DNA of 64,000 bases from contig NW_027270987.1 of NCBI RefSeq assembly GCF_040938485.1, positions 1,302,001-1,366,000 of the forward strand, given 5' to 3'. Made by a program: the position numbers and the translations under genes. Shown piece after piece: positions 3,001 to 47,543 of the stretch. Under the pieces are notes generated by a model. The model saw nothing but the letters and a program-made list of their open reading frames with translations, ran no database searches and was not told where the DNA came from. Each line of letters begins with the position of its first letter. Within the stretch, counting starts at the first letter, position 1. Source of the DNA: Diadema antillarum. Its lineage: Eukaryota.

Positions 3001-6000
3001 AACCGGCAAGGTCATATTTAGGTACGAGCAATGCCATATGTTTTAAATGCTGTCATTTTGTTCTTATTCTCCAACAATTGTGTTTCCTTCACATTTTGAA
3101 GCCATACAGAAACACACAAAGAAAATGCATTCTCTGACCGAGTAGGCTCCCTAGATTTCAGATTTACCAGTAGACCTACGCTAGTTGTATATAGAACATG
3201 GCTGACGCCACGTTTTCTAAAGAGGGTGGGGGGGGGGGGGGAGGACCAGTTTATATTTTCTGGTGCTACTTCCGGGTTTCATCAGCTAACAAACAATGTT
3301 TTATCGGCTCTGCTGATATAACTTACATTAACCACATTCTATGTTTTTACTTGTGCCACTTCCGAGGTTATAAAAGAAAAGTGGTTATACCCTATATGTT
3401 TTCCAATGCATTCTGCAAAAAAAAAAAAAAAAAAAAAAAACCGTTCCGCTGGTTGAAGTAACTGCCAACGTGTAAAAACTTATCGAGAAATCAACTCTAA
3501 GACCTCTTTCAGCATCCTGTTTGAATAGCTGCTGTATGATACTACATGAGACGTGATTGATATTTTCACACATTGATAAAGAATAAGTTAAAGAGCCTAG
3601 ATGTACATAGTGCAATTGGAGGATGTGAGCTAAAAACTGGTGCGCATCATACCCACCTTGCCCGTGGCTGTCGATCCAGTGAAAGAGATCTTGGACACGA
3701 GCTCGCTCTCGCACAGCACCTTGCCGACAGCCGGAGCGTTGGCGCGAGAACATGGCACGACGTTGAAGACACCGTCTGGGATGCCAGCCTCCTTCATCAT
3801 CTGAGATTGAATAAACAATAGGGTGATGGGGGGGGGGGGGGGATAAAATCGTTAACAAAGGTCCCTGAGGCGTCGAACTATACTGATTATATCCCCAATA
3901 CTGCCTTATTGAGAGCTATTGAAATGCATCAAGTTCATTAATCGCAAAAGCAATTGCTAGATTTTATTGTTATTAACATTATCATGATTAACATCATGTT
4001 TATCACTATTTATTCCATTATCACAATTTAAGTTTTTCTTCGTCATAGATCCTTTTTTTTTTTGGGAGTGGGGGAGGCTAACTAAGGTCCCTGCGGCGTA
4101 GAACTAATGATTATGTTTCCAATATTTCATTAAGAATTATTGAAACTATTGAAAAGTTTATCTATCGCAAAGACAATTGTTAGATTTCATTGTTGTTGTG
4201 AGCATTGTCATGATTAACATAATGTCTGTTTATCACTACATTGTATTCTATTATCGTAGTTTGAGTTTTTCTTCATCAGTGACCCTTTTTTGACATGATA
4301 ATGATACTACGATGCTTATAGCGCATATCACTACTGTAGAATCTCTTTACGCTTTACAGGATAAGGTTGAAAATGGAAAATTATAATAAGAGTAGTAAAT
4401 GATCATAAATGATCATTATCATGGGGAGAAGAATTCCACCAATCACTGGTCGAGATATACTTATCAACATCTTTACCATCATTTTCATTATCATTATGAA
4501 CATCAATGCTACTACTATCACCATGATCACTATCATATCGCTATGCGTGAGTGTAGTCGTAGGCCTCGTGATCACGCTTTAGAAATAGTTTTGTTAACAT
4601 ACAATATTGCCAAGAAAACTATCTCGCATCTGTTGCACCAGGCGGATCATAAATACCTTTAAAGCCTTAATTAGGCCTACTATTGAATTCTCTCTTCTTT
4701 GCTTTTCCTTAGCCGTAGAGATTTTCAATACAGCAAATATTTCCGATCTTCTCGTATGAACCTATTATGGTGTTTTCCAAAAATCAAAGAGGACAATTTT
4801 GTTTCTTGGGGGGCATTTCATCAACGAGTTCGTCGGAAATTTTCACCGACAAATTTGCTATCAACCAATCAGACGCAAGAATTTCAGTAGCTTTTAACAG
4901 TTGTCAGTGTAAATCACTGACAAGAAGTTTCATGAAACGGTCCCCTGGTCGTGTCATAAAACCGGACTTACGTCACAAAGGGCAAGAGCTGAAAGGGGCG
5001 TGTCCTCTGAGGGTTTGATGACGACAGTACATCCCGCGGCCAGCGCCGCTCCAGCCTTCCTCGTGATCATCTCCATTGGGAAGTTCCACTGGAATTCACC
5101 ATGACAGTCAGAGTAATCATCTAGTAAATGTTATCAATCTCTGTCGCCAGAGGGCTTACTTTAAAAACACTTCACAGCCAAGAATACACCCATTATAGTT
5201 AATGTTAAAGGACAAGTTCACTTTCTCAAACATGTGGGTTGAGCGAATGCAGCAATATTAGTAGAACACATCATTGAAAGTTTTGGGGAAATCCCACGAT
5301 CTGTTATGAAGTTATGAATTTTTAAAGTGTCTGCGCAATCACTGCTGGATGAGAAGACTACTACAGTGTATGATGTCAGATGCGTACAACGATATAAGGA
5401 AAATAAAACGAGAATTTCACAAAACTTTACTTTTTGAATAAAGTGGAAATTTCTTCAACTTGTTACTGACATATGTTAAGGGTAATATTATTCCCTCTGC
5501 CTCCTAAAAGAGAGAAGTGAAGTGACCATCTGTTATGCGAGAAAATTGAAAGCATGTTGAATTTTCTTTATACTTTCTTTATATCGTTGTACACATGTGA
5601 CATCACAAGCTATAGTAGTCTTCTCATTCAGCCGTGACAGAGCAGAAACTTTAAGAATTCATAACTTTTGAACAGATTGTCCGATTTTCCTCAAACTCTC
5701 ACTGATGTGTTCTACTAATATTGCTGCATTCACTCAATCCACATGTCTATGAAGGAGAACTTGTCCTTTAATGTTACAGTGTATGACTGTTTCTTCCCTG
5801 AGCCTGTGTTGAATGTGCAACGAAATACATGTACTACATTCCAACAGGTAAATCACATATCACGCTGAAGTGTTGATAAAGATTGTGATTTTCACCAGAG
5901 CCTATGTGTGAAACGTCCAGTCTTGGCAGCTTAGCACTAAAGTAGAACTAAAGGATTTCGGAGTAATTTTAGATGATGAGGGCTATGTAACAAACAAACA

Positions 6001-8904
6001 TCACCTCTCAGTATACTATATGAACAGCACATCACGATCCATTGTTACAGTACTCATACACGGAATTTATGGTTAGTCTGTTTATTTTTCATCGATTTCG
6101 CGAAACCTCCGTTCTAGAATCTGTGAGCAGTGTCATAATCCGATTTTAAAATGAAAACAAATATATTATGACGAGTATCAGACTTTTGACAGTATAGCTT
6201 CTGGCATTAAATGACTCTAATGATTTGTCAAGCGCCATTTTGGTAATATCTCTATTTTGGCATCTGGCAACATTAATCCAGAGGGTACTCACAGGGGTGA
6301 TAAGACCAGCCACGCCCACTGGCTGTCGAATCACCAGGGCCCGTTTATTCTTCTGCAGGTTGGTATGGACGTCCCCGACAGTGCGCGTTGCTTCCTCCGC
6401 GAAGTACTTGACGAAACCGGAAGCACCCCTAGCTTCATTGGTCGATTCCATCATCTTCTTGCCCTAACAAGAGAACAGAAATGTGTGGCGGTAAACATCT
6501 TGTGTTTTCAAAGCGCTAATATGGGTGGAATTACAATTATTGTTCTTTTTGAAATAAGTTACAATCGCTAGCAATTGAGACACTTCTGAGCTCTTCCACG
6601 AGTTTCTCAAAATGACCCCCAAAGTTTAGACATGCTCTCTTTGAGGACCCTTTCTTCTCATTCTTTTCCTGAAAGTCCACCTTCTTAGCAGCCTCAAGTT
6701 AAAACTCCACAGAATAATATTATGTTTGGGAGTTCTACTTTTTCAAGATCCAAAGTGAGTTTTCGTATGGTACATTCGTACAAGTGTCTCTCTGTATGGT
6801 CGTTTACTAAGCTAGTATGGCATCCAATGCACTTAGCCACCACAGTTCATTCCCATGCACACCATCTTAAGAATTGCATGTTTCATGTCTAAGTTATTGC
6901 AGAGTATTCGCTCATGCCATCCTTCTTTGCTAAGATAATGATTTAAATCAAAAGAGTGTTACCTAATTTTACTTTCTCTCTCAATCATGTTAAAACTACG
7001 GCCAATCCGGAGTCTACAGCAACATTTATATTTACACTATCAGCACTTTTAATCCGTATACATGCACTGCTCAGTAATTTAGATTAAGTATAGGAATGAC
7101 GCTTATGTTTACAGAGCAACCAATTTGTGAAATATCATTCTGTTGCTCTTCCAAGGTATTACTATGGCGTTCTGGGCTGGTAAGCAGGATATGGAGCAAT
7201 TACTAGAAAAGAAAATATATATATAAATCTCGGTTTAACATCTGATCAACAATTTCTCATTTGTTTCAGAGTGTGCGGGGTAGAGAATTCACTTCTAAAT
7301 GGTGTGTAACGTTTTTAATCAATTTTTCCTCTGATCGTGATCAAGATTGATCGACTTGCTTCATTATACAGTCATAAAACTCAGCGTATAAATTATCATT
7401 GTATTTCCGTTAACAGTATATATTTTTCTTTATTACGATGTTTATCTATCTTGCATCACGCTGTATAATATAATATGTTAAAGTTTTGCTGTAATTGTGT
7501 TTTGTTGGAAATGAATTCAAATGAAATAAAATGAGTGAAAAAAGGTGAAAACTGTGTAATGCAAAGATTTAATGTGACGGTCCCTGACAAATGTTTATCA
7601 AAATGGATAATAAAGATATGAGAGTGTATATGATATCATACGTGATTAAATTCCCACCAAATAAAGATAGATTTGCAAATGGTACAACCGAAAATAAAAT
7701 TTATCCCTCCACGGATTTGATAACATAGGATAATTGAAAGTGATAATGCAAAAAAAAAGAAAAAAGAATGACGTCCAGATGTTATCCAGTATGCAACGTT
7801 AGTAATTTACGAAGAATATTAACTTAATACAGAGTTTCAATGTCCATACCGCGCCCATTTTTTCTTTAAATGATCCTGTATTACCAGATTTTAGACCCCA
7901 AACCTATGAAATGCTGACATCGAAGAACTTCGGCCTTTATAATGCTATAGAATGCAGGTAAGAATATATCACTGTATATAGTTCCAACAATTCAGTGGAA
8001 TCACTGCGTGAAGAACCACCCTCCCCCTTCAAAAAAAAAAAGTTTACCTACTTGCACTTCAACTTTGGACTTTACCAGGGAGGTGGAAAGCTCCTATCTT
8101 CGCAAGACCCATAAAGTATACACACAAGGCATACATGTTAACAATATACACTAAAAATTGTATAGGAACCACATGAGAGCATCGCGTCTGACCTCAACTG
8201 CCCGTTCCACGTTCACCAAACAAGAGGCGGTGAAAACCTCACCAATTTATTAACAATGTCACGTGACTGCAATCGTTCCGCCTTCAAAATTGTTAACTCA
8301 TCCCAGAATCCTGTCCTCTGTGAACTTACATTTTCAACAGTAATAATCTTTGCGAGGTTTTCGACATTTTCATCCATCAGTTGGCCGAGACGCTTTAAAA
8401 TGGCCGCCCTCTCCTGCATCGTACAAACAAAACACAAAGGAAGACAAAACAAAATATGACAAGCAAACAATGAACATATTGAACACATCCTGTAATGGTA
8501 CAGGTGGTGGTCAATTCACTCCATGATACAGTGTGCGATACGACCAGCAATTAGATGGTGATATAGAGGTTGGTATAATATATTGCTTGAGTACTTGACC
8601 ATTGCATATCTTTATAAAGATCTTGAATTGCTCAATAATGATAAACGACATCAACTTAAAGACCCTTCGTATTTTGAAAAAGCCGTCAGTATGTGACATC
8701 TGTTAAATATTCTATGCAAGTCTTTGAATGATACACCTGTGCATAACATATTGAAGACCTAGCATACACGATTTTAAACAATACAGATAGACCTGATCAT
8801 GCATTTCAGCGTTAGCCGTGGAAACATGGGGACATAATGACATGAATCATGCTTATAGTGCCATGTCTAATAAACAGCAGTAGACGGGACTTTATCACAC
8901 ATTG

Positions 8905-12485: not shown

Positions 12486-13189
12486 CTGGTCACACGATAG
12501 GTCTATAGCTCTCACTCAACCTTCTGATTAGGACCAATATCACCTTTTATAGGATCATTATACGGTTTCCTGGGATGGATGGATGGATGACAAAATAGAG
12601 AACTAACACAATTTGATAAAACAGCAAGACTTTTTGACACAGTCAAAATTATGATACATAACATATCTCGCGTGGGTTGCAGATGGGCCTCTCCAATGAA
12701 TGATGACTTCTGGATTATCATCAGGGAGATGGTTCCACCTCCCTGATGAACTGTAAGTCTTTCTCTATCAACCACAAATCACACTTAGCGGGAACAACCC
12801 TCACACGCACTCACGGGCAACATATCACACACATCTGAAATACTATACTCCTCCGCCTGTCCTACAGAACTACATACGAGTGTGTCATCAAAACAAACGG
12901 TCTCATTTTGAAACATTGACCCGTAGCCAATCCCTATAAGATTCCGTGTTTGATCTCCCACAAGGTCGCAGTTATCAGTCGTTTTCCTGATTGACTGATC
13001 TACGCTGATTTACCCCTGCCGTTCATTGTTGTATTAGTGCAACAAAATATTACGTGTGCCATGTGGTTGGCAAGAGATATATCATTGAAACGCACAGTGT
13101 TACAATTAGGGTTTTCCATTTCGTCGCATGTGCGCATTCATAACTTTGAACTTGGACTCAGACAATTTAAACTGACACAGTATACTTAC

Positions 13190-18400: not shown

Positions 18401-19785
18401 CCTCACATGCATTGGGTGAAGAGCAGAATTGGTGCTCTTCACCACAAACAGAGCATTGTAAGATGAGGGAGCAGTTCAGGCCATCACGCTGGCTGGCATC
18501 CTCGAGCGGAATGAGGTGTCCTGAAAATAAGAGAATATTTTGTTACCCTCTATACAATACAAATGATGGCTGATCAATTTATGCAAGGGAACACTGAACT
18601 ATGTGACAGAATTATCAGTTGTTCCTTCTATTGACCAGTAAATAACATTCATAATCTTTTTTCTAATACACTAACTTAGAATTTATAATGTACGCTACCT
18701 ATAATATAGTGGTACACCAACATGTCAACTCACGACATGTTTCGTGGTCACACAATCCAACTTCAGTCTTCACCATATTCATCTGTGTAATGCTACTTGA
18801 CACTAGGACACTCACAGGTGGAATTCAACACTATAACACTCTCATTCTAAGTCAAAAACACTCATAATTATTACCTGCCTCCTATTTCTTGTATGCTTTC
18901 AAATTCAAGATGAACTTACTTACAGTTAGAATCTAGAGCCTTCTCTACATCTGTCACATATCGCTTTCCAATAGAGAAGCCAGTCTAAATAAAGCAACCA
19001 TTCATCTCAATCTAATGTAAATATAAATAAGAATATACATCATTACTTGTATAAAAGTGTCATTTCACAAAGATCTCACCTCCATTGCAAACATGTGCTG
19101 CCTGAAGAGCATCCTTCAGCTGCTGGCCACTGATGAGGTAAAACCCCTCCAATTCCCGACGCGAATTGCTATGGGTGGGACTAGGGGCACTTGTACGTGG
19201 CAGTGCTGACTTGTTAGCCTCCAGTTTTCTTTCGGAGGCTGTTGGTGCTCCTTCTTCTTTCTCCTCCTCAAGCTTCCTTTTTTTTACTTCATAGGAGGGC
19301 ACTCCATGGAAACCTTTGCGTTTTTTGACATATCCTTGCCGTTTTCGCGTCATTTTGCTACAGAAAGTGAGTGTACTGGTGCTACTGTTCACACAGGCTG
19401 AGCAGGGCTAGAACCATGTGTGACCTCTCTACTGTGTCAGGGTCTGACACTAGAGGGCAGCATGCCACATTTAAGATCATGGGCTCATTTTGCTGAGCTC
19501 ACTGTGCCCTTCAAAATGATGCCTCATTTCATTATTTTTTTTCAAAAAATGGTGATTTTTTGGTATGTTGAAAAATGATAAATTATTTGCTGGAAAATAG
19601 CATGCAAGGTCATTAAATACCTATGTAATTATGCAATTTGAACTTGATTTTGAGGCATTTATTGTTGAGATACAACCATACAATTACAGATATTCATTTT
19701 TTAAATATCCATGAATCAACTGGACTTAAAATAAAAAAATCAAAATTTTTCAAGTATTTTGACCATTTATTGTGCATTTCCCCCC
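15476..19785 (-). mobile_element. Kolobok-type DNA transposon, apparently full length (4310 bp)
   Basis: TTAA at 15472-15475 and 19786-19789; GG...CC ends with short imperfect TIR (GGTGTCACCATGCA vs GGGGGGAAATGCA); encodes a DDE transposase. Confidence 0.75.
16691..19353 (-). CDS. DDE transposase, 3 exons, 617 aa (Kolobok-type; family often labelled Mutator-like transposase)
   Basis: Exons 19353-19080, 18520-18231, 17980-16691 join in frame through GT-AG (1854 nt, no internal stop). Motifs: CSVC zinc finger, YDGTWHRRG (D), CDGDSS (D), DCVGH (C2H), TQNQNESFH (E), basic C-terminal tail. Confidence 0.9.
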
Positions 19786-20093
19786 TTAAAAGCGCGGCCG
19801 AGCCCGGCAGTGTAAACGGACAAAATTGCGGGGTCTCATTCCAGTACATTGTAATTGCTCTGAATATATACGACATTATTTTCCTTGACATCATTCCTTC
19901 TGCCTTAAGATATAATTATTATTACGAATGATTGTGCCATGAACTATACGTAAGGGGCCGGAAAGGGGAGCACATGCCGGCGGAGCAATTATTGGCAGAG
20001 GAAAATTATTACAGAGTACAAGCATTTGTGGCAACTCTCGGAGCAATATTGTCGGGGAGCATTTTCTCGTCACCCCTCGTTATTTCCGTCTAT

Positions 20094-20123
20094 CCAGGGA
20101 GGTGGAAGAGAGCACCTCCCTGG
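20094..20123. mobile_element. 30-bp hairpin micro-element with 5-bp TSD
   Basis: tctat-CCAGGGAGGTG-gaagagag-CACCTCCCTGG-tctat. Confidence 0.75.
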
Positions 20124-20202
20124 TCTATCGTATCGCCTCGCACACCATTATCACTGTCAGATGATTTCCAATTAATACCAGTAAATGAGCTCTCGAAACC
20201 TG

Positions 20203-20241
<39 letters not shown>

Positions 20242-20718
20242 CGTGTTAGAGGGGAGTGGGGTATGGACAGTTTATATATATATATACGCTGCAAACAGAT
20301 ACATATAAAACGATTGTTGCATATACGTATTTTGTTTTCCTGGAAAAATCAGATATAAGAGACCAGGGTTATGGGTAGGGTGATAGTAATATAAATAGAA
20401 GGATTCCGTTGGATCTAACACGAGTCAGGTTACCTTGGTCAAATCTGAAAAAAAAAAAAAAAAAAAACTCGGAAGGTAAGTGCAAGTTTGATAACAAGAT
20501 ATAATACATGTATTTTGTAAATTGCTCGGCTCCGAAGTCCTATTGCCAACTGATTAAATGTCCAGATAAACATTTCTGGCTTACAAATACCATCTCTTTC
20601 TCACTTTTACTGACAGACTTACAAAAATATAAAATCTTATGCACACTTTACTTCAGTCTTAACACAATTTCCATATACCAACCTTGAAGGCGCTACAGGG
20701 ATCCATTGCTTAATTAAA

Positions 20719-20747
20719 GCAGGGAGGTGAGATTAAAACCTCCCTGC
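20719..20747. mobile_element. 29-bp hairpin micro-element with 5-bp TSD
   Basis: ttaaa-GCAGGGAGGT-gagattaaa-ACCTCCCTGC-ttaaa. Confidence 0.75.
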
Positions 20748-22804
20748 TTAAAGCGACCATGCACATGAAAAACACAAACACACACGCACACACCCAACAA
20801 ACACTAACACACAACAACTACATATACATGCCTATAGATGATGGTGTGTGTGCTGTTGTGTTTGTTTCTCTACCATTATGCATGAATCTACACGGAAGAT
20901 TTCATGCTGATTTCATGCTGATGTATTAAAGTGCTTCCGCTTACACATCATGACCATGAAATTCAAAGGAAAGTAGTCATATATTTCTCAGATGGAAAGG
21001 GGCGAAATGTTTATTGGCTCGGAGAAGCTTTGTTCGCTACTCTGCACTTATTGCATATACTGTCGTCTAAGCGATTTATACAATACACTGTATACAAATT
21101 ATTGTATAAAGATTATTCTTATGTGGACATACTTTTTTTCAGCTCTCGAAAACACTTGCGTCCCTTTCGTTATATGCAGCTTCGATACGAAGTTTCTTAC
21201 AGTATACAACTTAGCATGGCAAGGGTCATATACCAAGGATTTTATGACAAATATACCAGTCAAGATGATGATACACTGTATAAAGAACTACTGTATTCAG
21301 AAAGTTTGCATGCAAAACCAAGTACGATGAAAATAAAAAGATCATCATTTTATATAATGACGAAAATAAACATATTATGTTTCAATGAATCTATGTGTTG
21401 AAAAGGATTTAGTAGTCCCATATACATTTCAAACTTATTGCGCAATAATGATGATTACCAAGGAAATCATGGCATATCATGTGTTCAGAGGGAGAACGGT
21501 TAACGGAGACGTTTTTGATCAAAATCTGCTTTTATGTCCATGTCAGGTCCATGTGAAATCCGTATCACATTATTTTGTTATGTCTTCATTGTGTCAGTTA
21601 CTCTAGCAACGTTAGAACAAATCAGTGATGACGATGATTTCACGCAAAATGACCAAAATACCAGGTTCTTAATTCATATAGTTTCAAAATGATCACTAAA
21701 ATAAAAGTATTCATCTATTAAAAACAACTGTGCGGGGTTTTGCGTCACTCTTTTGGAAGATTCGGTCAAAATCCTTCATTTTTTTTCACTCTGTCGTATC
21801 TCAAAAAAAAAAAAAAAAATCGGGTACCCATTTTGCCATTTTATTCCTATACATGCATACCCGACTTAAAAACGTTTAAAGCAAACACGATCAAATGTAT
21901 CACAGACCACGAATATTTAGCGTTCCATGTCGAACAAAGCTCATTTTAGCATATACTGTATGATCCCTGCTTATCTGAATCTAACTGGTCAACGCGTAAA
22001 AGGAGAAGAAAATAAGAATGCTCGGTTTCAATTGATACGATTCAATGCTAAGTTTCAAGTGTGATGTGTTCTCGCTTACAAACTTTTGGAGGAATTTAGA
22101 CCAAAATTCCCTCAGCCAATGTTTACATGCAAACTTGCTCTTTGATTGTTGAATTAATTCAATTCACATCGAAATAATGGGAACTCCTTCACGACACGCT
22201 TTAAAAGTGCAATATTCTTCAAGATTCAATTAGTAAACCTTACCATGCATGACTGATAACGATATAAAAAATATATAATGTAATCATCATTGTCTCGTTC
22301 ACATCATATATTCAGAGTAATTATATAACAACAAAGCATATGATCTATTTTCCATGATATACAATTATAATACAATTTAGTATACTCTTTTTCTCAAACA
22401 CTTGTATATGTGTTTAACTTACATCTTTGAGTAAGTTAAGTTTATAATCATAATCCTTAATACAGTATTTTTTTTTTTCTAATCAAGTTCTCTACATAAA
22501 TTGTTCCCCCATGTGGAACGTTAATTAAGTCTGGTCTTAGGTATATGTACATAATGCTAAACAAGTGATTTCACCTTCGAAAAACACATTGGGAAAAATC
22601 TGACGCCTGTTTCATAAAGAGGTATACAGAATTGTAAGTTGCGGTGAAAATAACTGATGTTGCCATGACAACAGTCGGAAATCAACCAATCAGCTGTAGG
22701 CAGTGACGTCATTACCGTGGCAAACCGGCATCAATGCAATTCACAGAGTACTGCAGTCATTCTCAATGAAAACGGGCCCCAGTGAGAGGAGGGGACCCGC
22801 GTGC

Positions 22805-44782: not shown

Positions 44783-47543
44783 CATGAATGCATTTTAGTA
44801 AATCATACAATGTACATGACCTCGATTCTGTACTATTAGATTAAATCCATGACAATGCACAATAATCCCAGGGGTAGATTTATTTTACCAAAGTCAAAGG
44901 CAGAGGTGAAATTCAAAAAAAAAAGTACGGGGTCATCTACCATTGCACTTGGAATGCACATAATATTGAATAGTGCCTTAAAGGGATGGTACAGTATTGG
45001 TGGAGATGGGAATTGGGTTTTAACTTTTTGCGAGATACCAAGAGAACACTTATGAAATAGTACAGAGCATACCATTTTAAGAGGAATTCAAAGTTTATTT
45101 GATGAAAATCGGGTTTGGCATAACTGAAACATCCAAAAACAAAGGAAAACAAAGCGATCGTAAAAAAGTGTGGGTCCCACACTTATTAGAATCGCTCTGT
45201 TTTGGATATCTCAGCCATTTCAAAACCAATTTTCATCAAATAAACGTCGAATTCCTCATGGAATTACATGTTCTTTCATATTTCATAAGAGGTTTCTCAT
45301 TATCTCACCAAAAAATGTAAGAAACCTGAAATTAGGTCTCTCCCAAAACTATACAGTCCCTTTAAAACCTACTGAACACGCACAATGAATTTGTTTAAGT
45401 ATACAGGTGGTGTCTTTCACATTAAATTATAACTAGGGCCAGATCTCGTGGGTATAATAAGTGCATGAGCGTACGCTATATCGTAAAATCAACAACAAAT
45501 GCAAATTCAACCAATATATTATATGGTATCAGAACAATAATAAAATTCATCCCACGAAGTCATTTTTCCGGTCCCTTGACAAAAAAACAATTAAAGTACC
45601 AGATCTTCGCTCTGCAGAGCAAAGACCCGGCACGAGCGAACCTTGAAGGTCAAATCATTTTGTATGACTTCTCAAAATCTTCTTCCTGTACTTTGAACCT
45701 TACAGCTGTACCTACAGTCGAAATAACGCACTGTCACCATACCGTGTGCCCGGTAAGAGTATGAGTCGGTATGTGTAGAGATTATCGGGGACATTTCATC
45801 TAGTTCTTTGTGCACTGCAGGAATTCCTACGTGGAGGCTATCGAGCGTCTTATCCAATTGTTTGATATAGCGTCGTTTGTCTGATGGTCGTTACGTAATG
45901 TAATGTACCCATAACGACGTTTAGTTGCTCTCACAATGTGTTTTGTTCTCTCTCTCTATTTTAAAACGATTCGTCCACATTCAGAATAGGTGGAATCTTG
46001 CTCCGCCTGGCAAATCATTAGTACAACGAAATTACGCCACAGTTACCTGTCTCCATCGCATTTCTATGGGTAGCTCAATAGACCACTTCACCAGGGAGGT
46101 GGAAGAGAGATCGACTCTTTCCCACCTCCTCGACTTTACTGACAAGTCACATTACATGTATACCTTAATAACGTAGACATTTCCCCTAGACAACAATCAA
46201 ACTTCCCCAAGGCTTGCCTGACATACCAACAACTACAATGCATACGAAATGGATTCTACGTATTGAAATGATTTTAGTATGCACAGGTGGAAGACCAAGC
46301 TTGCCCAGGTCCTTAAAAGAAAAACATTCATAAAAGTATTATTTGAATACGCTAATAAACTGACATAATAAAAATGAAATATATTTCTCGAGTTGGAGTG
46401 CACAAAGAAATGTAGTTTCTGTTGAAATAATCAGTCGCCTCACTCCTGTGTAGGCCGTCACAAATGTTTTGTGAATCGTGTAGTAAAAGAAGTCCTGAAA
46501 TCGTCGGGAGCAGCAATGATTATTAACCTTACAATGATGCATTACGAGGTCGTATTCTTTGGGTTGATATTCGAAGAAATGCACGGAAACGTGTATACTT
46601 GGGTGCAAAATGGAAAGGATAAGGGAAAAGTGGAATCAGGTCGACAGCACAGATTTAGTGTTCAGGTGATGTATTATTTAGAATCCCTTGAAGACTCAAA
46701 ATATGCAATCATAATTACTTTCCCAAGTGAAGAATCTAGAAAATCATCACAAGAAGGCGAAATAAATCGCTACTATTACTAAAAGCGCATTTGGACCTAT
46801 AGCGGGGAACACAAAAAAAAAAACCCACAAAAGCAAAGCAAAGCAAACCAAAACAACTTTGAATCAGAAATTCGTATTGACATCGAAGCAAGGGTATTTA
46901 ATGACAACTAGGTCAACTGATGGAACGGACGCTAGCTTGTATGAGCCTGATGGACACCCGGTTGAATTTTGTTGGCCCATGCAACCCGATATACCACCTA
47001 CATGTATCTCTGACAGTTTCATTCGTTCAAGACCACGTCTAGTCTGAAGCGAGTGAGCTCTACAAGGATTCTCTCTTAAGGGTTTACATGATATACCTTG
47101 GCAGTTGTGTCCCTCCAGGGTCCGTAAAAAGTCTCGTAGGCAACCCTGACCGCTTCTTCCATGTCGGCGGCATTGCCATCAGCAACCAGGGCCAGTTGGT
47201 TCCCATTGGCCGGATTCTTCACGGGGTACGTCGCTCCGGACTTGGCCGCCACCCACGAACCGTTGATGAAAGCCTGCTCGCGAAACAGCGGGCCGAAGCT
47301 CGACAAGGACGACGACATTCTGAGGTGCTGGTGGAAAAAGAGGTGCGGCTTTGGGACATCCGTCCGTGAGAGTCTGGCGGTGAGAGGTCCTCGACAGACG
47401 GTGGCGTGCGGCTGGGATGACACTGACTGATGCCGGAGCGAAGTGTGACACCTCGTGCGGTTGCTGAACCGTGCAGAGAGCACCCTCGGAAAATTTGCCG
47501 AAGGCCTGAGCAGGTATGTCACTGACTGAGCCATCATTGCCAT
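22805..47543 (-). CDS. ALDH5A1: Succinate-semialdehyde dehydrogenase, mitochondrial-type, paralog A (9 exons, 565 aa)
   Basis: Exons 47543-47097, 36425-36342, 35425-35255, 34524-34408, 33964-33821, 33341-33198, 32646-32491, 30845-30676, 23069-22805, all GT-AG and in frame. [22 protein letters not shown] and NEGLISS keep the SSADH residues R213, R334, S498, E306, C340 and C342 (human numbering). The N-terminal ~75 aa are Arg/Ser-rich and acid-poor. The ORF-track start at 47573 is TTG; the first ATG is 47543. Confidence 0.96.
25560..26045 (-). mobile_element. 3' fragment of an RLE-type non-LTR retrotransposon (HERO/NeSL/R2-like), degenerate
   Basis: After correcting two +1 frameshifts: TLHHILSNCP...[10 protein letters not shown]...RPDLLILW...IVELTVP...HQRKVEKY...LEIWARG, i.e. 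zinc-knuckle end, RHN motif and PD-(D/E)xK endonuclease. Confidence 0.8.
27338..27689 (-). pseudogene. Disabled extra SSADH terminal exon inside intron 8 of paralog A
   Basis: Phase-2 acceptor (ccacttccccgctcag); reads F*DEEE[87-bp insert][84 protein letters not shown]. Confidence 0.9.
27583..27669. repeat. Interstitial telomeric repeat (TAACCC)n with TAATCC variants
   Basis: 87 bp, about 14 units, sitting inside a codon of the pseudo-exon. Confidence 0.95.
30881..31229 (-). mobile_element. tRNA-derived SINE with Nin-like central domain
   Basis: A box TGGCTCAGTCGG, B box GGTTCGAACCC, core ggacataaaatgaaggtcccgtgtg...atgcacgtaaaaga, (AAAC)n tail. Confidence 0.8.
32166..32302. other. Assembly gap in intron 7 of paralog A
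   Basis: Run of N. Confidence 0.99.
36068..36265. mobile_element. GAGTGA/TCACTC-repeat MITE fragment (same family as 50267-50469)
   Basis: Shares gagtgaaaat(a/g)ttcactcttgaag with the 50267 copy; internal perfect hairpin gagtgacctcagggatcactc...gagtgatccctgaggtcactc. Confidence 0.7.
39290..43906 (+). mobile_element. Tx1/L1-clade non-LTR retrotransposon, 5'-truncated (ORF2 plus 3' UTR)
   Basis: ORF2 39402-43161 has an APE domain (FLQET, GGDFN, SRLDY, PDH), RT ([32 protein letters not shown]) and C-terminal CSFC...HLFLHC. A-rich tail at ~43890-43906. No ORF1 in view. Confidence 0.93.
39402..43161 (+). pseudogene. Tx1/L1 ORF2 (endonuclease + reverse transcriptase) with two lesions
   Basis: Frameshifting deletion near 39438 where the NVRGL-type APE motif should be, and an in-frame TAG at 41923-41925 (FDFL*HGKDR, expected W). 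ORFs 39565-41925 and 41956-43161 share one frame. Confidence 0.9.
44139..44260. mobile_element. Small Harbinger-type MITE
   Basis: TIR GGGGTGTTTCATCAA/TTGATGAAACACCCC; possible CAG TSD. Confidence 0.75.
44982..45361. mobile_element. Non-autonomous Kolobok-type MITE
   Basis: TTAA on both sides; TIR AGGGATGGTACAGTATTGG vs AGGGACTGTATAGTTTTGG (15/19). Confidence 0.8.

What the first reader, a model, noticed from the sequence alone, without database searches (positions are those of the whole stretch)
20094..20747. Family of ~30-bp hairpin micro-transposons with 5-bp TSDs and co-varying terminal base pairs
Seen: tctat[CCAGGGAGGTG-8nt-CACCTCCCTGG]tctat at 20094 and ttaaa[GCAGGGAGGT-9nt-ACCTCCCTGC]ttaaa at 20719. 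Related copies are at 12721-12746 (TCAGGGAGATGG-tt-CCACCTCCCTGA, no TSD), 46091-46133 (longer loop, TSD 4/5) and a half copy at 8075. The core CAGGGAGGT is fixed, the loop varies freely, and the outermost pair changes but stays complementary (C-G, G-C, T-A). Five copies in 64 kb imply high abundance. Inference: minimal TIR-only elements far below usual MITE size, or footprints of an unrecognised mechanism; standard repeat finders would miss them.
Basis: partly seen in the sequence, partly recalled or inferred. Interest (0 to 1): 0.7.

Follow-up and report, generated by a model that had tools for sequence, protein, structure and literature searches.

The report
Transposon excision scars, sea urchin
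The tiny hairpins are not jumping genes: they are the scars left where a cut-and-paste transposon sat and then left, thousands are kept in this sea-urchin genome, and their shape records how the enzyme cut the DNA.

Summary
The hairpins are real. CAGGGAGGT occurs 7 times in the window against 0.24 expected. CAGGGAGGT-N(0-30)-ACCTCCCTG occurs at 5,974 places in the 1.75-Gb assembly, and the reversed control at none.

The target duplication is 7 bp, not 5 (gtctatc at 20088/20123). The "co-varying outer pair" is the last and first base of that duplication.

Each hairpin is two truncated copies of one transposon end joined head to head with 0-7 extra bases.

I found a long family with the same ends. 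It is mostly a 1,561-bp non-coding element with 31-bp inverted ends. At least 74 copies are 99-100% alike, and 36 of 37 paired copies have perfect 7-bp duplications.

Hairpin arms stop abruptly at 19-20 nt of that 31-nt end. Sizes of 49-108 bp are almost absent. Informative hairpins mostly carry one left-type and one right-type arm.

One public run holds the exact empty site at 20095.

Best reading: these are excision footprints of a transposase that cuts about 19-20 nt inside the element, as the P element does at 17 nt. The family is probably of the P superfamily (7-bp duplication, GT...AC target as in Galileo). No transposase gene was linked to it.

The scan had reached the same reading on other DNA of this genome (s1-224560, s1-211237, s1-220911).

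The parts
20088..20094 (.). left copy of the 7-bp target duplication, gtctatc
   Evidence: identical to 20123-20129
20095..20122 (.). 28-bp excision scar: an 18-nt arm (CAGGGAGGTGGAAGAGAG) joined directly to a 10-nt arm (CACCTCCCTG)
   Evidence: It is polymorphic: a contig of run X1 skips 20088-22 exactly, 35 nt with 7 nt of ambiguity (table 5). Contigs of run X2 carry the scar (record 11).
20123..20129 (.). right copy of the 7-bp target duplication, gtctatc
20713..20719 (.). left target duplication, attaaag (6 of 7 match the right copy)
20720..20746 (.). 27-bp excision scar: a 13-nt arm of the T2 type (CAGGGAGGTGAGA), 5 filler bases and a 9-nt arm
   Evidence: present unchanged in run X2 (record 13) and present in run X3 (record 22)
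20747..20753 (.). right target duplication, cttaaag
12722..12745 (.). 24-bp family member with one changed base in the left arm and no target duplication; the flanks extend the palindrome by 4 nt (tcat/atga)
   Evidence: A one-mismatch arm this close to a perfect arm is not expected by chance. The duplication was probably lost during repair.
46085..46139 (.). 41-bp scar (46092-46132) with a decayed right arm, between acttcac and actttac (6 of 7 match)
8069..8090 (+). single arm (CAGGGAGGTGGAA...) after actttac, with no partner arm: a one-sided scar
   Evidence: Similar single arms are common genome-wide.

Best explanation
Each hairpin is an excision footprint. A cut-and-paste DNA transposon with ends CAGGGAGGTG... 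inserted at the site and duplicated 7 bp of target (preferred form roughly G-T-n-n-n-A-C). Later it was cut out.

Inferred step: the transposase cuts one strand exactly at the element's end and the other strand about 19-20 nt inside it. Each chromosomal flank therefore keeps a single-stranded tail made of the first 19-20 nt or fewer of the element's inverted repeat.

Inferred step: the cell's end-joining repair trims these two tails by varying amounts and joins them, sometimes adding a few bases.

The result is: duplication + up to 20 nt of one end + 0-7 nt + up to 20 nt of the other end, inverted + duplication. That is a 17-48-bp palindrome which cannot move again.

Shown here: the 7-bp duplications, the existence of long elements with the same ends and the same duplications, the ceiling on arm length, an empty allele and paralogous empty sites.

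Inferred here: the position of the staggered cut, the repair route, and the assignment to the P superfamily. I put the footprint reading at about 0.8 and the P-superfamily assignment at about 0.6-0.65.
For: (1) The duplication is 7 bp. It is perfect in 17 of 35 sites, in 24 of 39 sites (by eye) and in 36 of 37 paired long elements (by eye).

(2) A long family was found. It is mostly 1,561 bp with no ORF above about 85 aa. Its 31-bp inverted ends match at 29 of 31 positions, and it has the duplication attctac. There are 74 exact 35-mer left ends, and copies are 99-100% alike.

(3) The parent's two ends differ at nt 14-15 (GG against CA). Scars with both arms of 14 nt or more carry one arm of each type in 6 of 7 cases. 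So they derive from both ends of one element.

(4) Arm length has a ceiling. Among distinct events in the first 100 rows, about 10 arms are 17 nt, about 17 are 18 nt, about 9 are 19 nt and at most 2 are 20 nt. Every sequence that continues past 21 nt is an intact parent.

(5) Size has a ceiling. A gap of 0-30 nt gives 5,974 sites, 31-60 gives 115 and 61-90 gives 55. The last two classes are mostly two neighbouring scars.

(6) The junction spectrum fits end joining. Of the 27 held sites under 45 bp, 8 are blunt, 9 have 1-3 added bases, 6 have 4-7 added bases and 3 overlap by 1-2 nt. This matches end joining at P-element overhangs (PMC2895639).

(7) Empty sites exist. Run X1 has a contig joint from 20087 to 20123 that skips 35 nt with 7 ambiguous bases. 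Locus L067 carries a 27-bp scar with duplication ctgcaaa where loci L065 and L066 have a single ctgcaaa.

(8) Scars separated by exactly one 7-bp duplication, scars nested in scars, and roughly 130 neighbouring pairs against about 2 expected show repeated visits to the same spots.

(9) Literature. P transposase cuts 17 nt inside its 31-bp repeat (PMC7776569). Galileo and 1360, both of the P superfamily, make 7-bp duplications, and Galileo's target is GTANTAC (PMC4168063, PMC3698922).
Against: No transposase was tied to the family. None of the listed ends lies within 20 kb of any of the 79 P-type RNase H matches or any of the 104 hAT matches.

Only one arm variant (T2, ...GGTGAGAG/GGTGAGAC) has a verified long parent. 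For the other two variants (...GGTGGGAAGAG and ...GGTGGAAGAG, the latter being the type of the scar at 20095) no parent was found.

A few members break the ceiling: a 48-bp family with one arm of about 29 nt and a 52-bp palindrome of 26+26 nt.

About one site in seven has no duplication, and two sites have inverted rather than direct flanks (L005 and window 12722).

The cut position is read from scars, not measured. Several counts were made by eye on the first 100 rows of a listing.
Confidence: 0.78

Rival explanations
1. The hairpins are themselves mobile: ultra-minimal elements made only of inverted repeats, moved in trans by the family's transposase.
For: They have inverted ends and 7-bp duplications. 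One is polymorphic. Some short sequences recur at unrelated sites, for example one 26-bp form with four different flanks.
Against: Sizes and junctions form a continuum rather than families. The arms hold at most 19-20 of the 31-nt repeat and none of the subterminal sequence. Forms of 19-21 bp leave no room for two bound ends. The high-copy identical forms share their flanks and so ride inside other repeats. The forms that recur at unrelated sites are the simplest junctions, which are expected to recur as repair outcomes.
Confidence: 0.06
2. They are extreme internal-deletion derivatives made by interrupted gap repair. After a flush excision, copying from the sister copy starts at both ends, stops early and the ends are joined. 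No deep staggered cut is needed.
For: In Drosophila most repair products after P excision are of this kind (PMC2895639). Size variants of the long family exist: 659 bp, 1.6-2.6 kb and 4.76 kb. The rare members with arms of 26-29 nt fit short extra synthesis.
Against: Interrupted synthesis should give a smooth, long-tailed distribution of arm lengths. Instead arms of 17, 18 and 19 nt are common and arms of 21 nt or more are absent in the sample. Total sizes of 49-108 bp are almost empty.
Confidence: 0.12
3. They are chance palindromes, or a host motif such as a protein-binding site, unrelated to transposition.
For: None beyond the palindromic shape.
Against: The reversed control gives 0 sites against 5,974. 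The sites have 7-bp direct repeats of otherwise unrelated flanks. Their ends are identical to those of a transposon family. Empty sites exist.
Confidence: 0.01

Closest known systems
Excision footprints of the Drosophila P element (17-nt staggered cleavage, end joining of the donor overhangs)
   Same: The target duplication is kept on both sides. Between the two copies lie the outermost nucleotides of both inverted repeats, trimmed by varying amounts and joined blunt, with 1-3 added bases or with short overlaps. There is an upper limit on arm length set by the cut. The parent has 31-bp inverted repeats.
   Different: The duplication is 7 bp rather than 8. The limit is about 19-20 nt rather than 17. 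These are old, natural scars kept by the thousand in a wild deuterostome genome, not products of laboratory crosses. No P-type transposase has been tied to them.
Galileo and 1360 (Hoppel), the P-superfamily lineages of Drosophila
   Same: They make 7-bp target duplications. The target is palindromic with G-T at one end and A-C at the other (Galileo: GTANTAC, PMC4168063). They have many non-coding derivatives.
   Different: The inner target positions differ: here T and A are favoured at positions 3 and 5, against A and T in Galileo. The repeats here are short (31 bp), not long and foldback-like. Galileo and 1360 are insect elements. I found no report of scar populations for them.
MITEs (miniature inverted-repeat transposable elements)
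   Same: Short, non-coding, with inverted ends and target duplications, and numerous.
   Different: MITEs are 50-800 bp, keep complete ends, and form families of near-identical copies that spread by transposition. The hairpins are 17-48 bp, have incomplete ends and nearly all differ from one another.
hAT transposons (Ac/Ds, hobo, Hermes)
   Same: Their ends begin CAG(G/A)G. The target motif is nT...An. Short derivatives arise by faulty gap repair.
   Different: hAT makes 8-bp duplications. It excises through hairpins on the flanking DNA, so its footprints hold no element sequence. None of the 104 hAT-domain matches lies near a family member.

Membership tests
P superfamily of DNA transposons | An autonomous member encodes a P/THAP9-type transposase (RNase H fold with a GTP-binding insertion) between the same ends | tested here: inconclusive
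   The genome has 79 matches to PF21787, some with intact ORFs of 640-980 aa. None lies within 40 kb of a listed family end. Loci L055-L064 hold no CAGGGAGGTG within 1.5 kb either side of the match. DNA around the multi-copy P-type genes could not be fetched.
P superfamily of DNA transposons | Target duplication of 7-8 bp | tested here: met
   The duplication is exactly 7 bp in scars and in 36 of 37 long elements. Galileo and 1360 make 7-bp duplications (PMC3698922).
P superfamily of DNA transposons | Deep staggered cleavage inside the inverted repeat (17 nt in Drosophila P), so that donor sites keep element sequence | tested here: met
   This is indirect evidence. Scars keep up to 19-20 nt of each end, with an abrupt ceiling. 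The cut itself was not measured.
P superfamily of DNA transposons | Palindromic target motif centred on the duplication | tested here: met
   Pooled over both orientations of 17 perfect duplications, position 2 is T in 27 of 34 and position 6 is A in 27 of 34. G/C is favoured at the outer positions. Galileo's target is GTANTAC (PMC4168063).
MITE / self-mobile micro-element | Families of near-identical copies at unrelated sites, each with its own duplication | tested here: not met
   Nearly every site has its own junction. High-copy identical forms share the same flanks.
MITE / self-mobile micro-element | Complete terminal repeats able to bind the transposase | tested here: not met
   Arms are at most 19-20 nt of a 31-nt repeat. 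In the P element the inner half of the repeat and subterminal sites are bound by the enzyme (PMC7776569).
hAT superfamily | 8-bp target duplication | tested here: not met
   No site has a perfect repeat in the 8-nt register, against 17 in the 7-nt register.
hAT superfamily | A transposase with the hAT dimerisation domain inside a member | tested here: not met
   There are 104 PF05699 matches and none lies inside or next to a listed long member. The nearest is 20 kb away on contig C1122.

The most novel reading that the evidence does not exclude
The family is moved by an enzyme that is not a canonical P-type transposase. No P-type or hAT gene lies near any long member, although copies are 99-100% alike. 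That would make it a second, undescribed lineage of eukaryotic transposases that cut about 20 nt inside the element. The thousands of scars would then be the first record of that enzyme's chemistry.
Probability: 0.12. Interest if true: 0.7.

Novelty: new member of a known kind. Interest (0 to 1): 0.42.

Why it matters
Excision footprints that keep element sequence are known mainly from laboratory work on the Drosophila P element. Here a wild deuterostome genome has kept at least about 6,000 of them. They outnumber the 74-150 surviving ends of the only long family identified by tens to one.

The scars are a natural record of three things. The first is how often and where the transposon landed and left, with strong local clustering and repeated use of the same 7-bp targets. 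The second is where the enzyme cut, about 19-20 nt in. The third is how the sea-urchin germ line joins non-complementary 3' tails.

There is also a practical point for annotation. Repeat finders miss these scars. They could be mistaken for micro-MITEs, hairpin RNA genes or regulatory palindromes.

Tried and rejected
(1) I first took a 1,512-bp stretch in locus L050 for a parent of the 48-bp hairpins. One search showed its interior is a different, very abundant repeat (ends CAGTCAGTCCGCAGCG, 4-bp duplication CACT) that had inserted into a 48-bp hairpin. Rejected.

(2) I took the 35-mer CAGGGAGGTGGAAGAGAGACTCTTCTTAGTGC(A/T)TA (568 hits) for the end of a second parent family. One search showed that all copies share the same upstream flank TACGTCAGGC. 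It is one single arm carried inside another repeat of about 590 copies. Rejected.

(3) Four single 19-mer ends followed for 9.5 kb (L046-L049) have no matching right end and no P-type coding sequence.

(4) There is no allelic copy of window 19800-20200 in the assembly. The empty site came from reads instead.

(5) A pattern for other families with the same 31-bp repeat found none.

(6) A protein search with a P-type ORF of this genome found no identical protein. This genome's proteins are therefore not in that collection, and flanks could not be fetched that way. A P-type element of an unknown organism (L070) has 30-nt ends beginning CACTG and no clear duplication. It says nothing about this family.

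(7) Literature searches for the motif and for sea-urchin footprints found nothing relevant.

I did not try to get round that.

Full report
SETTING. The window is eukaryotic DNA with microsatellites, poly-A runs and about 40% G+C. It is G000:C99:1302001-1366000 of a 1.75-Gb assembly in 2,963 contigs. Earlier notes of this scan name the organism as the sea urchin Diadema antillarum. I did not verify that.

THE OBSERVATION.
- 20095-20122 and 20720-20746
- 12722-12745
- 46092-46132
- a lone arm at 8076

The 9-mer CAGGGAGGT occurs 7 times in the window against 0.24 expected. None of 100 shuffles reached 7. Genome-wide, CAGGGAGGT-N(0-30)-ACCTCCCTG occurs at 5,974 sites and the reversed control at none. 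The 10-mer CAGGGAGGTG occurs 27,087 times against 1,375 for its control. The family is real and large, and the window is about ten times richer than average.

THE FRAME IS WRONG. Flanks of 15 unselected genomic sites showed direct repeats of 7 bp, not 5. Over 35 distinct sites held as DNA, 17 have a perfect 7-nt repeat and 8 more match at 6 of 7. No site has a perfect repeat in a register of 4, 5, 6, 8, 9 or 10 nt. Random pairing of flanks gives 12 perfect in 2,000. Read by eye from the rows, 24 of 39 further sites are perfect and 7 match at 6 of 7.

In the window the first element reads gtctatc|CAGGG...CCCTG|gtctatc and the second attaaag|...|cttaaag. These two bases are complementary in only 10 of 35 sites, so nothing co-varies.

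The duplicated targets share a palindromic preference. T is at position 2 and A at position 6 in 27 of 34 orientations, G/C is favoured at the outer positions, and A/T in the middle. That preference can make the outer bases look paired in single cases.

ANATOMY. Between the duplications lie two copies of one sequence, head to head and cut back to different lengths. There are three variants of the arm...GGTGGGAAGAGAG...GGTGAGAG(G)/GGTGAGAC and ...GGTGGAAGAGAG. In the 27 held sites under 45 bp, the two arms are joined directly in 8, with 1-3 extra bases in 9, with 4-7 in 6, and with a 1-2-nt overlap in 3.

Total size falls off sharply. A gap of 0-30 nt between the two 9-mers gives 5,974 sites, 31-60 gives 115 and 61-90 gives 55. 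Most of the last two classes are two separate hairpins lying close together. So the hairpins are a class of their own and not the tail of a continuous series of deletion derivatives.

A LONG FAMILY WITH THE SAME ENDS. Listing what follows the 17-mer CAGGGAGGTGAGAGGAA showed one continuation that recurs at many places. It has 74 exact 35-mer copies. Three copies have different left flanks and then run on alike.

The element is 1,561 bp, ends in ...CACCTCCCTG and is flanked by attctac on both sides. It has 31-bp inverted ends that match at 29 of 31 positions. It has no reading frame above about 85 codons. Copies are 99-100% alike.

Pairing the left-end and right-end listings by position gave 37 copies, 36 with a perfect 7-bp duplication of the same GT...AC kind (by eye). 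Most are 1,561 bp. Others are 659 bp, 1.6-2.6 kb, 4,763 bp (at two different sites) and 8.8 or 13.2 kb (at one site on two contigs).

Two features tie the hairpins to this family.
- The two ends of the long element differ at nt 14-15 (GG on the left, CA on the right). Hairpins whose arms are both long enough to tell carry one arm of each kind in 6 of 7 cases. That is expected if both ends of one element were left behind. It is not expected if a single end had folded back.
- Arm length stops abruptly. Among distinct events in the first 100 rows, about 10 arms are 17 nt, about 17 are 18 nt, about 9 are 19 nt and at most 2 are 20 nt. Every sequence that goes on past 21 nt is an intact long element.

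TWO ERRORS OF MY OWN, CORRECTED. A 1,512-bp "element" in L050 is another repeat nested inside a 48-bp hairpin. A 35-mer with 568 copies, which I took for a second parent, always has the same upstream flank, so it is one lone arm riding in another repeat. For two of the three arm variants, including the one at 20095, no long parent is known.

EMPTY SITES. The assembly has no second copy of the window's locus. When contigs of four public runs were laid on 18800-22800, run X1 gave a contig that joins 20087 to 20123. It skips 35 nt, with 7 nt that fit either side (table 5). That is the 28-bp hairpin plus one copy of gtctatc, which is the exact unoccupied site. Run X1 may be the sample the assembly was built from, so this may be its second haplotype rather than another animal. 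Contigs of run X2 carry both hairpins unchanged (records 11 and 13), and run X3 carries the second (record 22).

Inside the long family itself, locus L067 has a 27-bp hairpin flanked by ctgcaaa where L065 and L066 have a single ctgcaaa.

Two contigs with identical flanks carry different hairpins at the same spot: C168:725693 has ...GTGAGACACC... and C1461:595106 has ...GTGGATCCACC....

REPEATED VISITS. Pairs of hairpins separated by exactly one 7-bp duplication, hairpins inserted into the arms of older hairpins, and roughly 130 close pairs where about 2 are expected from 5,974 random sites all show that the same spots were used again and again. Part of this excess is inflated by contigs that duplicate each other.

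MECHANISM. The simplest account has three steps: insertion with a 7-bp duplication, excision with a cut about 19-20 nt inside the element on one strand, and end joining of the two tails left on the chromosome.

This is what the Drosophila P element does. Its transposase cuts 17 nt inside a 31-bp repeat (PMC7776569). The donor ends keep 17-nt non-complementary 3' tails, which are joined blunt, with short insertions or at short overlaps (PMC2895639). The P superfamily also includes lineages with 7-bp duplications, Galileo and 1360, and Galileo prefers GTANTAC (PMC4168063, PMC3698922).

The position of the cut and the repair route are inferred from the scars. They were not measured.

THE ENZYME WAS NOT FOUND. 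The genome has 79 matches to the P-type RNase H domain. They include pairs that look like alleles of single genes, and a group of about a dozen intact 640-codon copies. No listed end of the family lies within 40 kb of any of them, and loci L055-L064 hold no such end. The 104 hAT-domain matches are no nearer than 20 kb. The superfamily therefore rests on the duplication length, the target motif and the scar geometry.

RIVALS.
- Self-mobile micro-elements are unlikely. The arms lack the inner third of the repeat, sizes down to 19 bp leave no room for two bound ends, nearly every site has its own junction, and high-copy identical forms share their flanks.
- Interrupted gap repair after a flush cut would give a smooth spread of arm lengths. 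It may explain the few long-armed members (a 48-bp family with an arm of about 29 nt, and a 52-bp palindrome of 26+26 nt) but not the ceiling.
- Chance is excluded by the controls, the duplications and the empty sites.

NOVELTY. This is a known kind of scar in a new place and in unusual numbers. The scan has already noted the same hairpins on other DNA of this genome. Notes s1-211237 and s1-220911 are first-reader notes. In s1-224560 a follow-up agent reached the same reading.

- the genome-wide counts
- the correction of the frame at this window
- a verified long family with the same ends
- the arm-type pairing
- the ceiling at 19-20 nt
- the empty allele at 20095
- the negative search for the enzyme

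Noticed in passing
L050:7929-9440 (G000:C138): A very abundant repeat (at least 640 first-look candidates, 98-99% alike) with ends CAGTCAGTCCGCAGCG and a 4-bp duplication CACT has inserted into a 48-bp scar.
   Followed up: partly
G000, e.g. C2:4178859, C7:5010819: About 590 copies of another repeat all contain the same lone arm CAGGGAGGTGGAAGAGAGAC after TACGTCAGGC. One scar or arm has been multiplied passively by its host repeat. Clusters with spacings of 638 and about 2,777 bp recur on several contigs.
   Followed up: partly
G000 C168:725638-725772 and C1461:595051-595186: Three scars lie in a row. The two contigs share all flanks but carry different middle scars, so independent events hit one site in two haplotypes or paralogous copies.
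   Followed up: no
G000 C915:447009-460172 and C594:946624-955442: The same insertion site (duplication gttagaa) holds a 13.2-kb version of the long family on one contig and an 8.8-kb version on the other. This is either nested insertions or a candidate autonomous copy. No P-type or hAT domain match lies inside.
   Followed up: no
L067 (G000:C7:2731036-2735798) and C948:1399445-1404207: A 4,763-bp variant of the long family is present at two different sites. From about nt 990 it carries a tandem repeat that reads as open frames of 160-180 codons.
   Followed up: no
L005 (G000:C2:5570) and window 12722-12745: A minority of scars have inverted rather than direct flanks (8 nt and 4 nt), as if one flank had been copied in reverse during repair.
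   Followed up: no
G000, (e.g. C400:807995, C400:927079, C224:826057, C99:560451): About a dozen P-type transposase copies have identical domain scores and intact open frames of 637-643 codons. They look like a young multi-copy family. Other P-type genes occur as near-identical pairs on two contigs (L056/L057, L058/L059, L060/L061).
   Followed up: partly
G000: Many loci appear twice on different contigs with the same flanks. The 1.75-Gb assembly seems to hold both haplotypes for part of the genome, so raw counts overstate the number of independent sites.
   Followed up: no
window 20733 (table 4): One contig of run X1 lacks 4 nt in the filler of the second scar. It could be a second allele of the scar or a contig from another locus.
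   Followed up: no
window 20006-20139, run X4: Contigs of a second organism pile up on the hairpin alone (depth about 400, while the neighbouring bins are empty). A related species seems to hold the same family of scars.
   Followed up: no
L069:216-382: The first 167 nt of the 1,561-bp element end in an inverted, slightly altered copy of its own terminus (...CACCCCTCCCTG). This is an internal subterminal repeat or an old nested short member.
   Followed up: no
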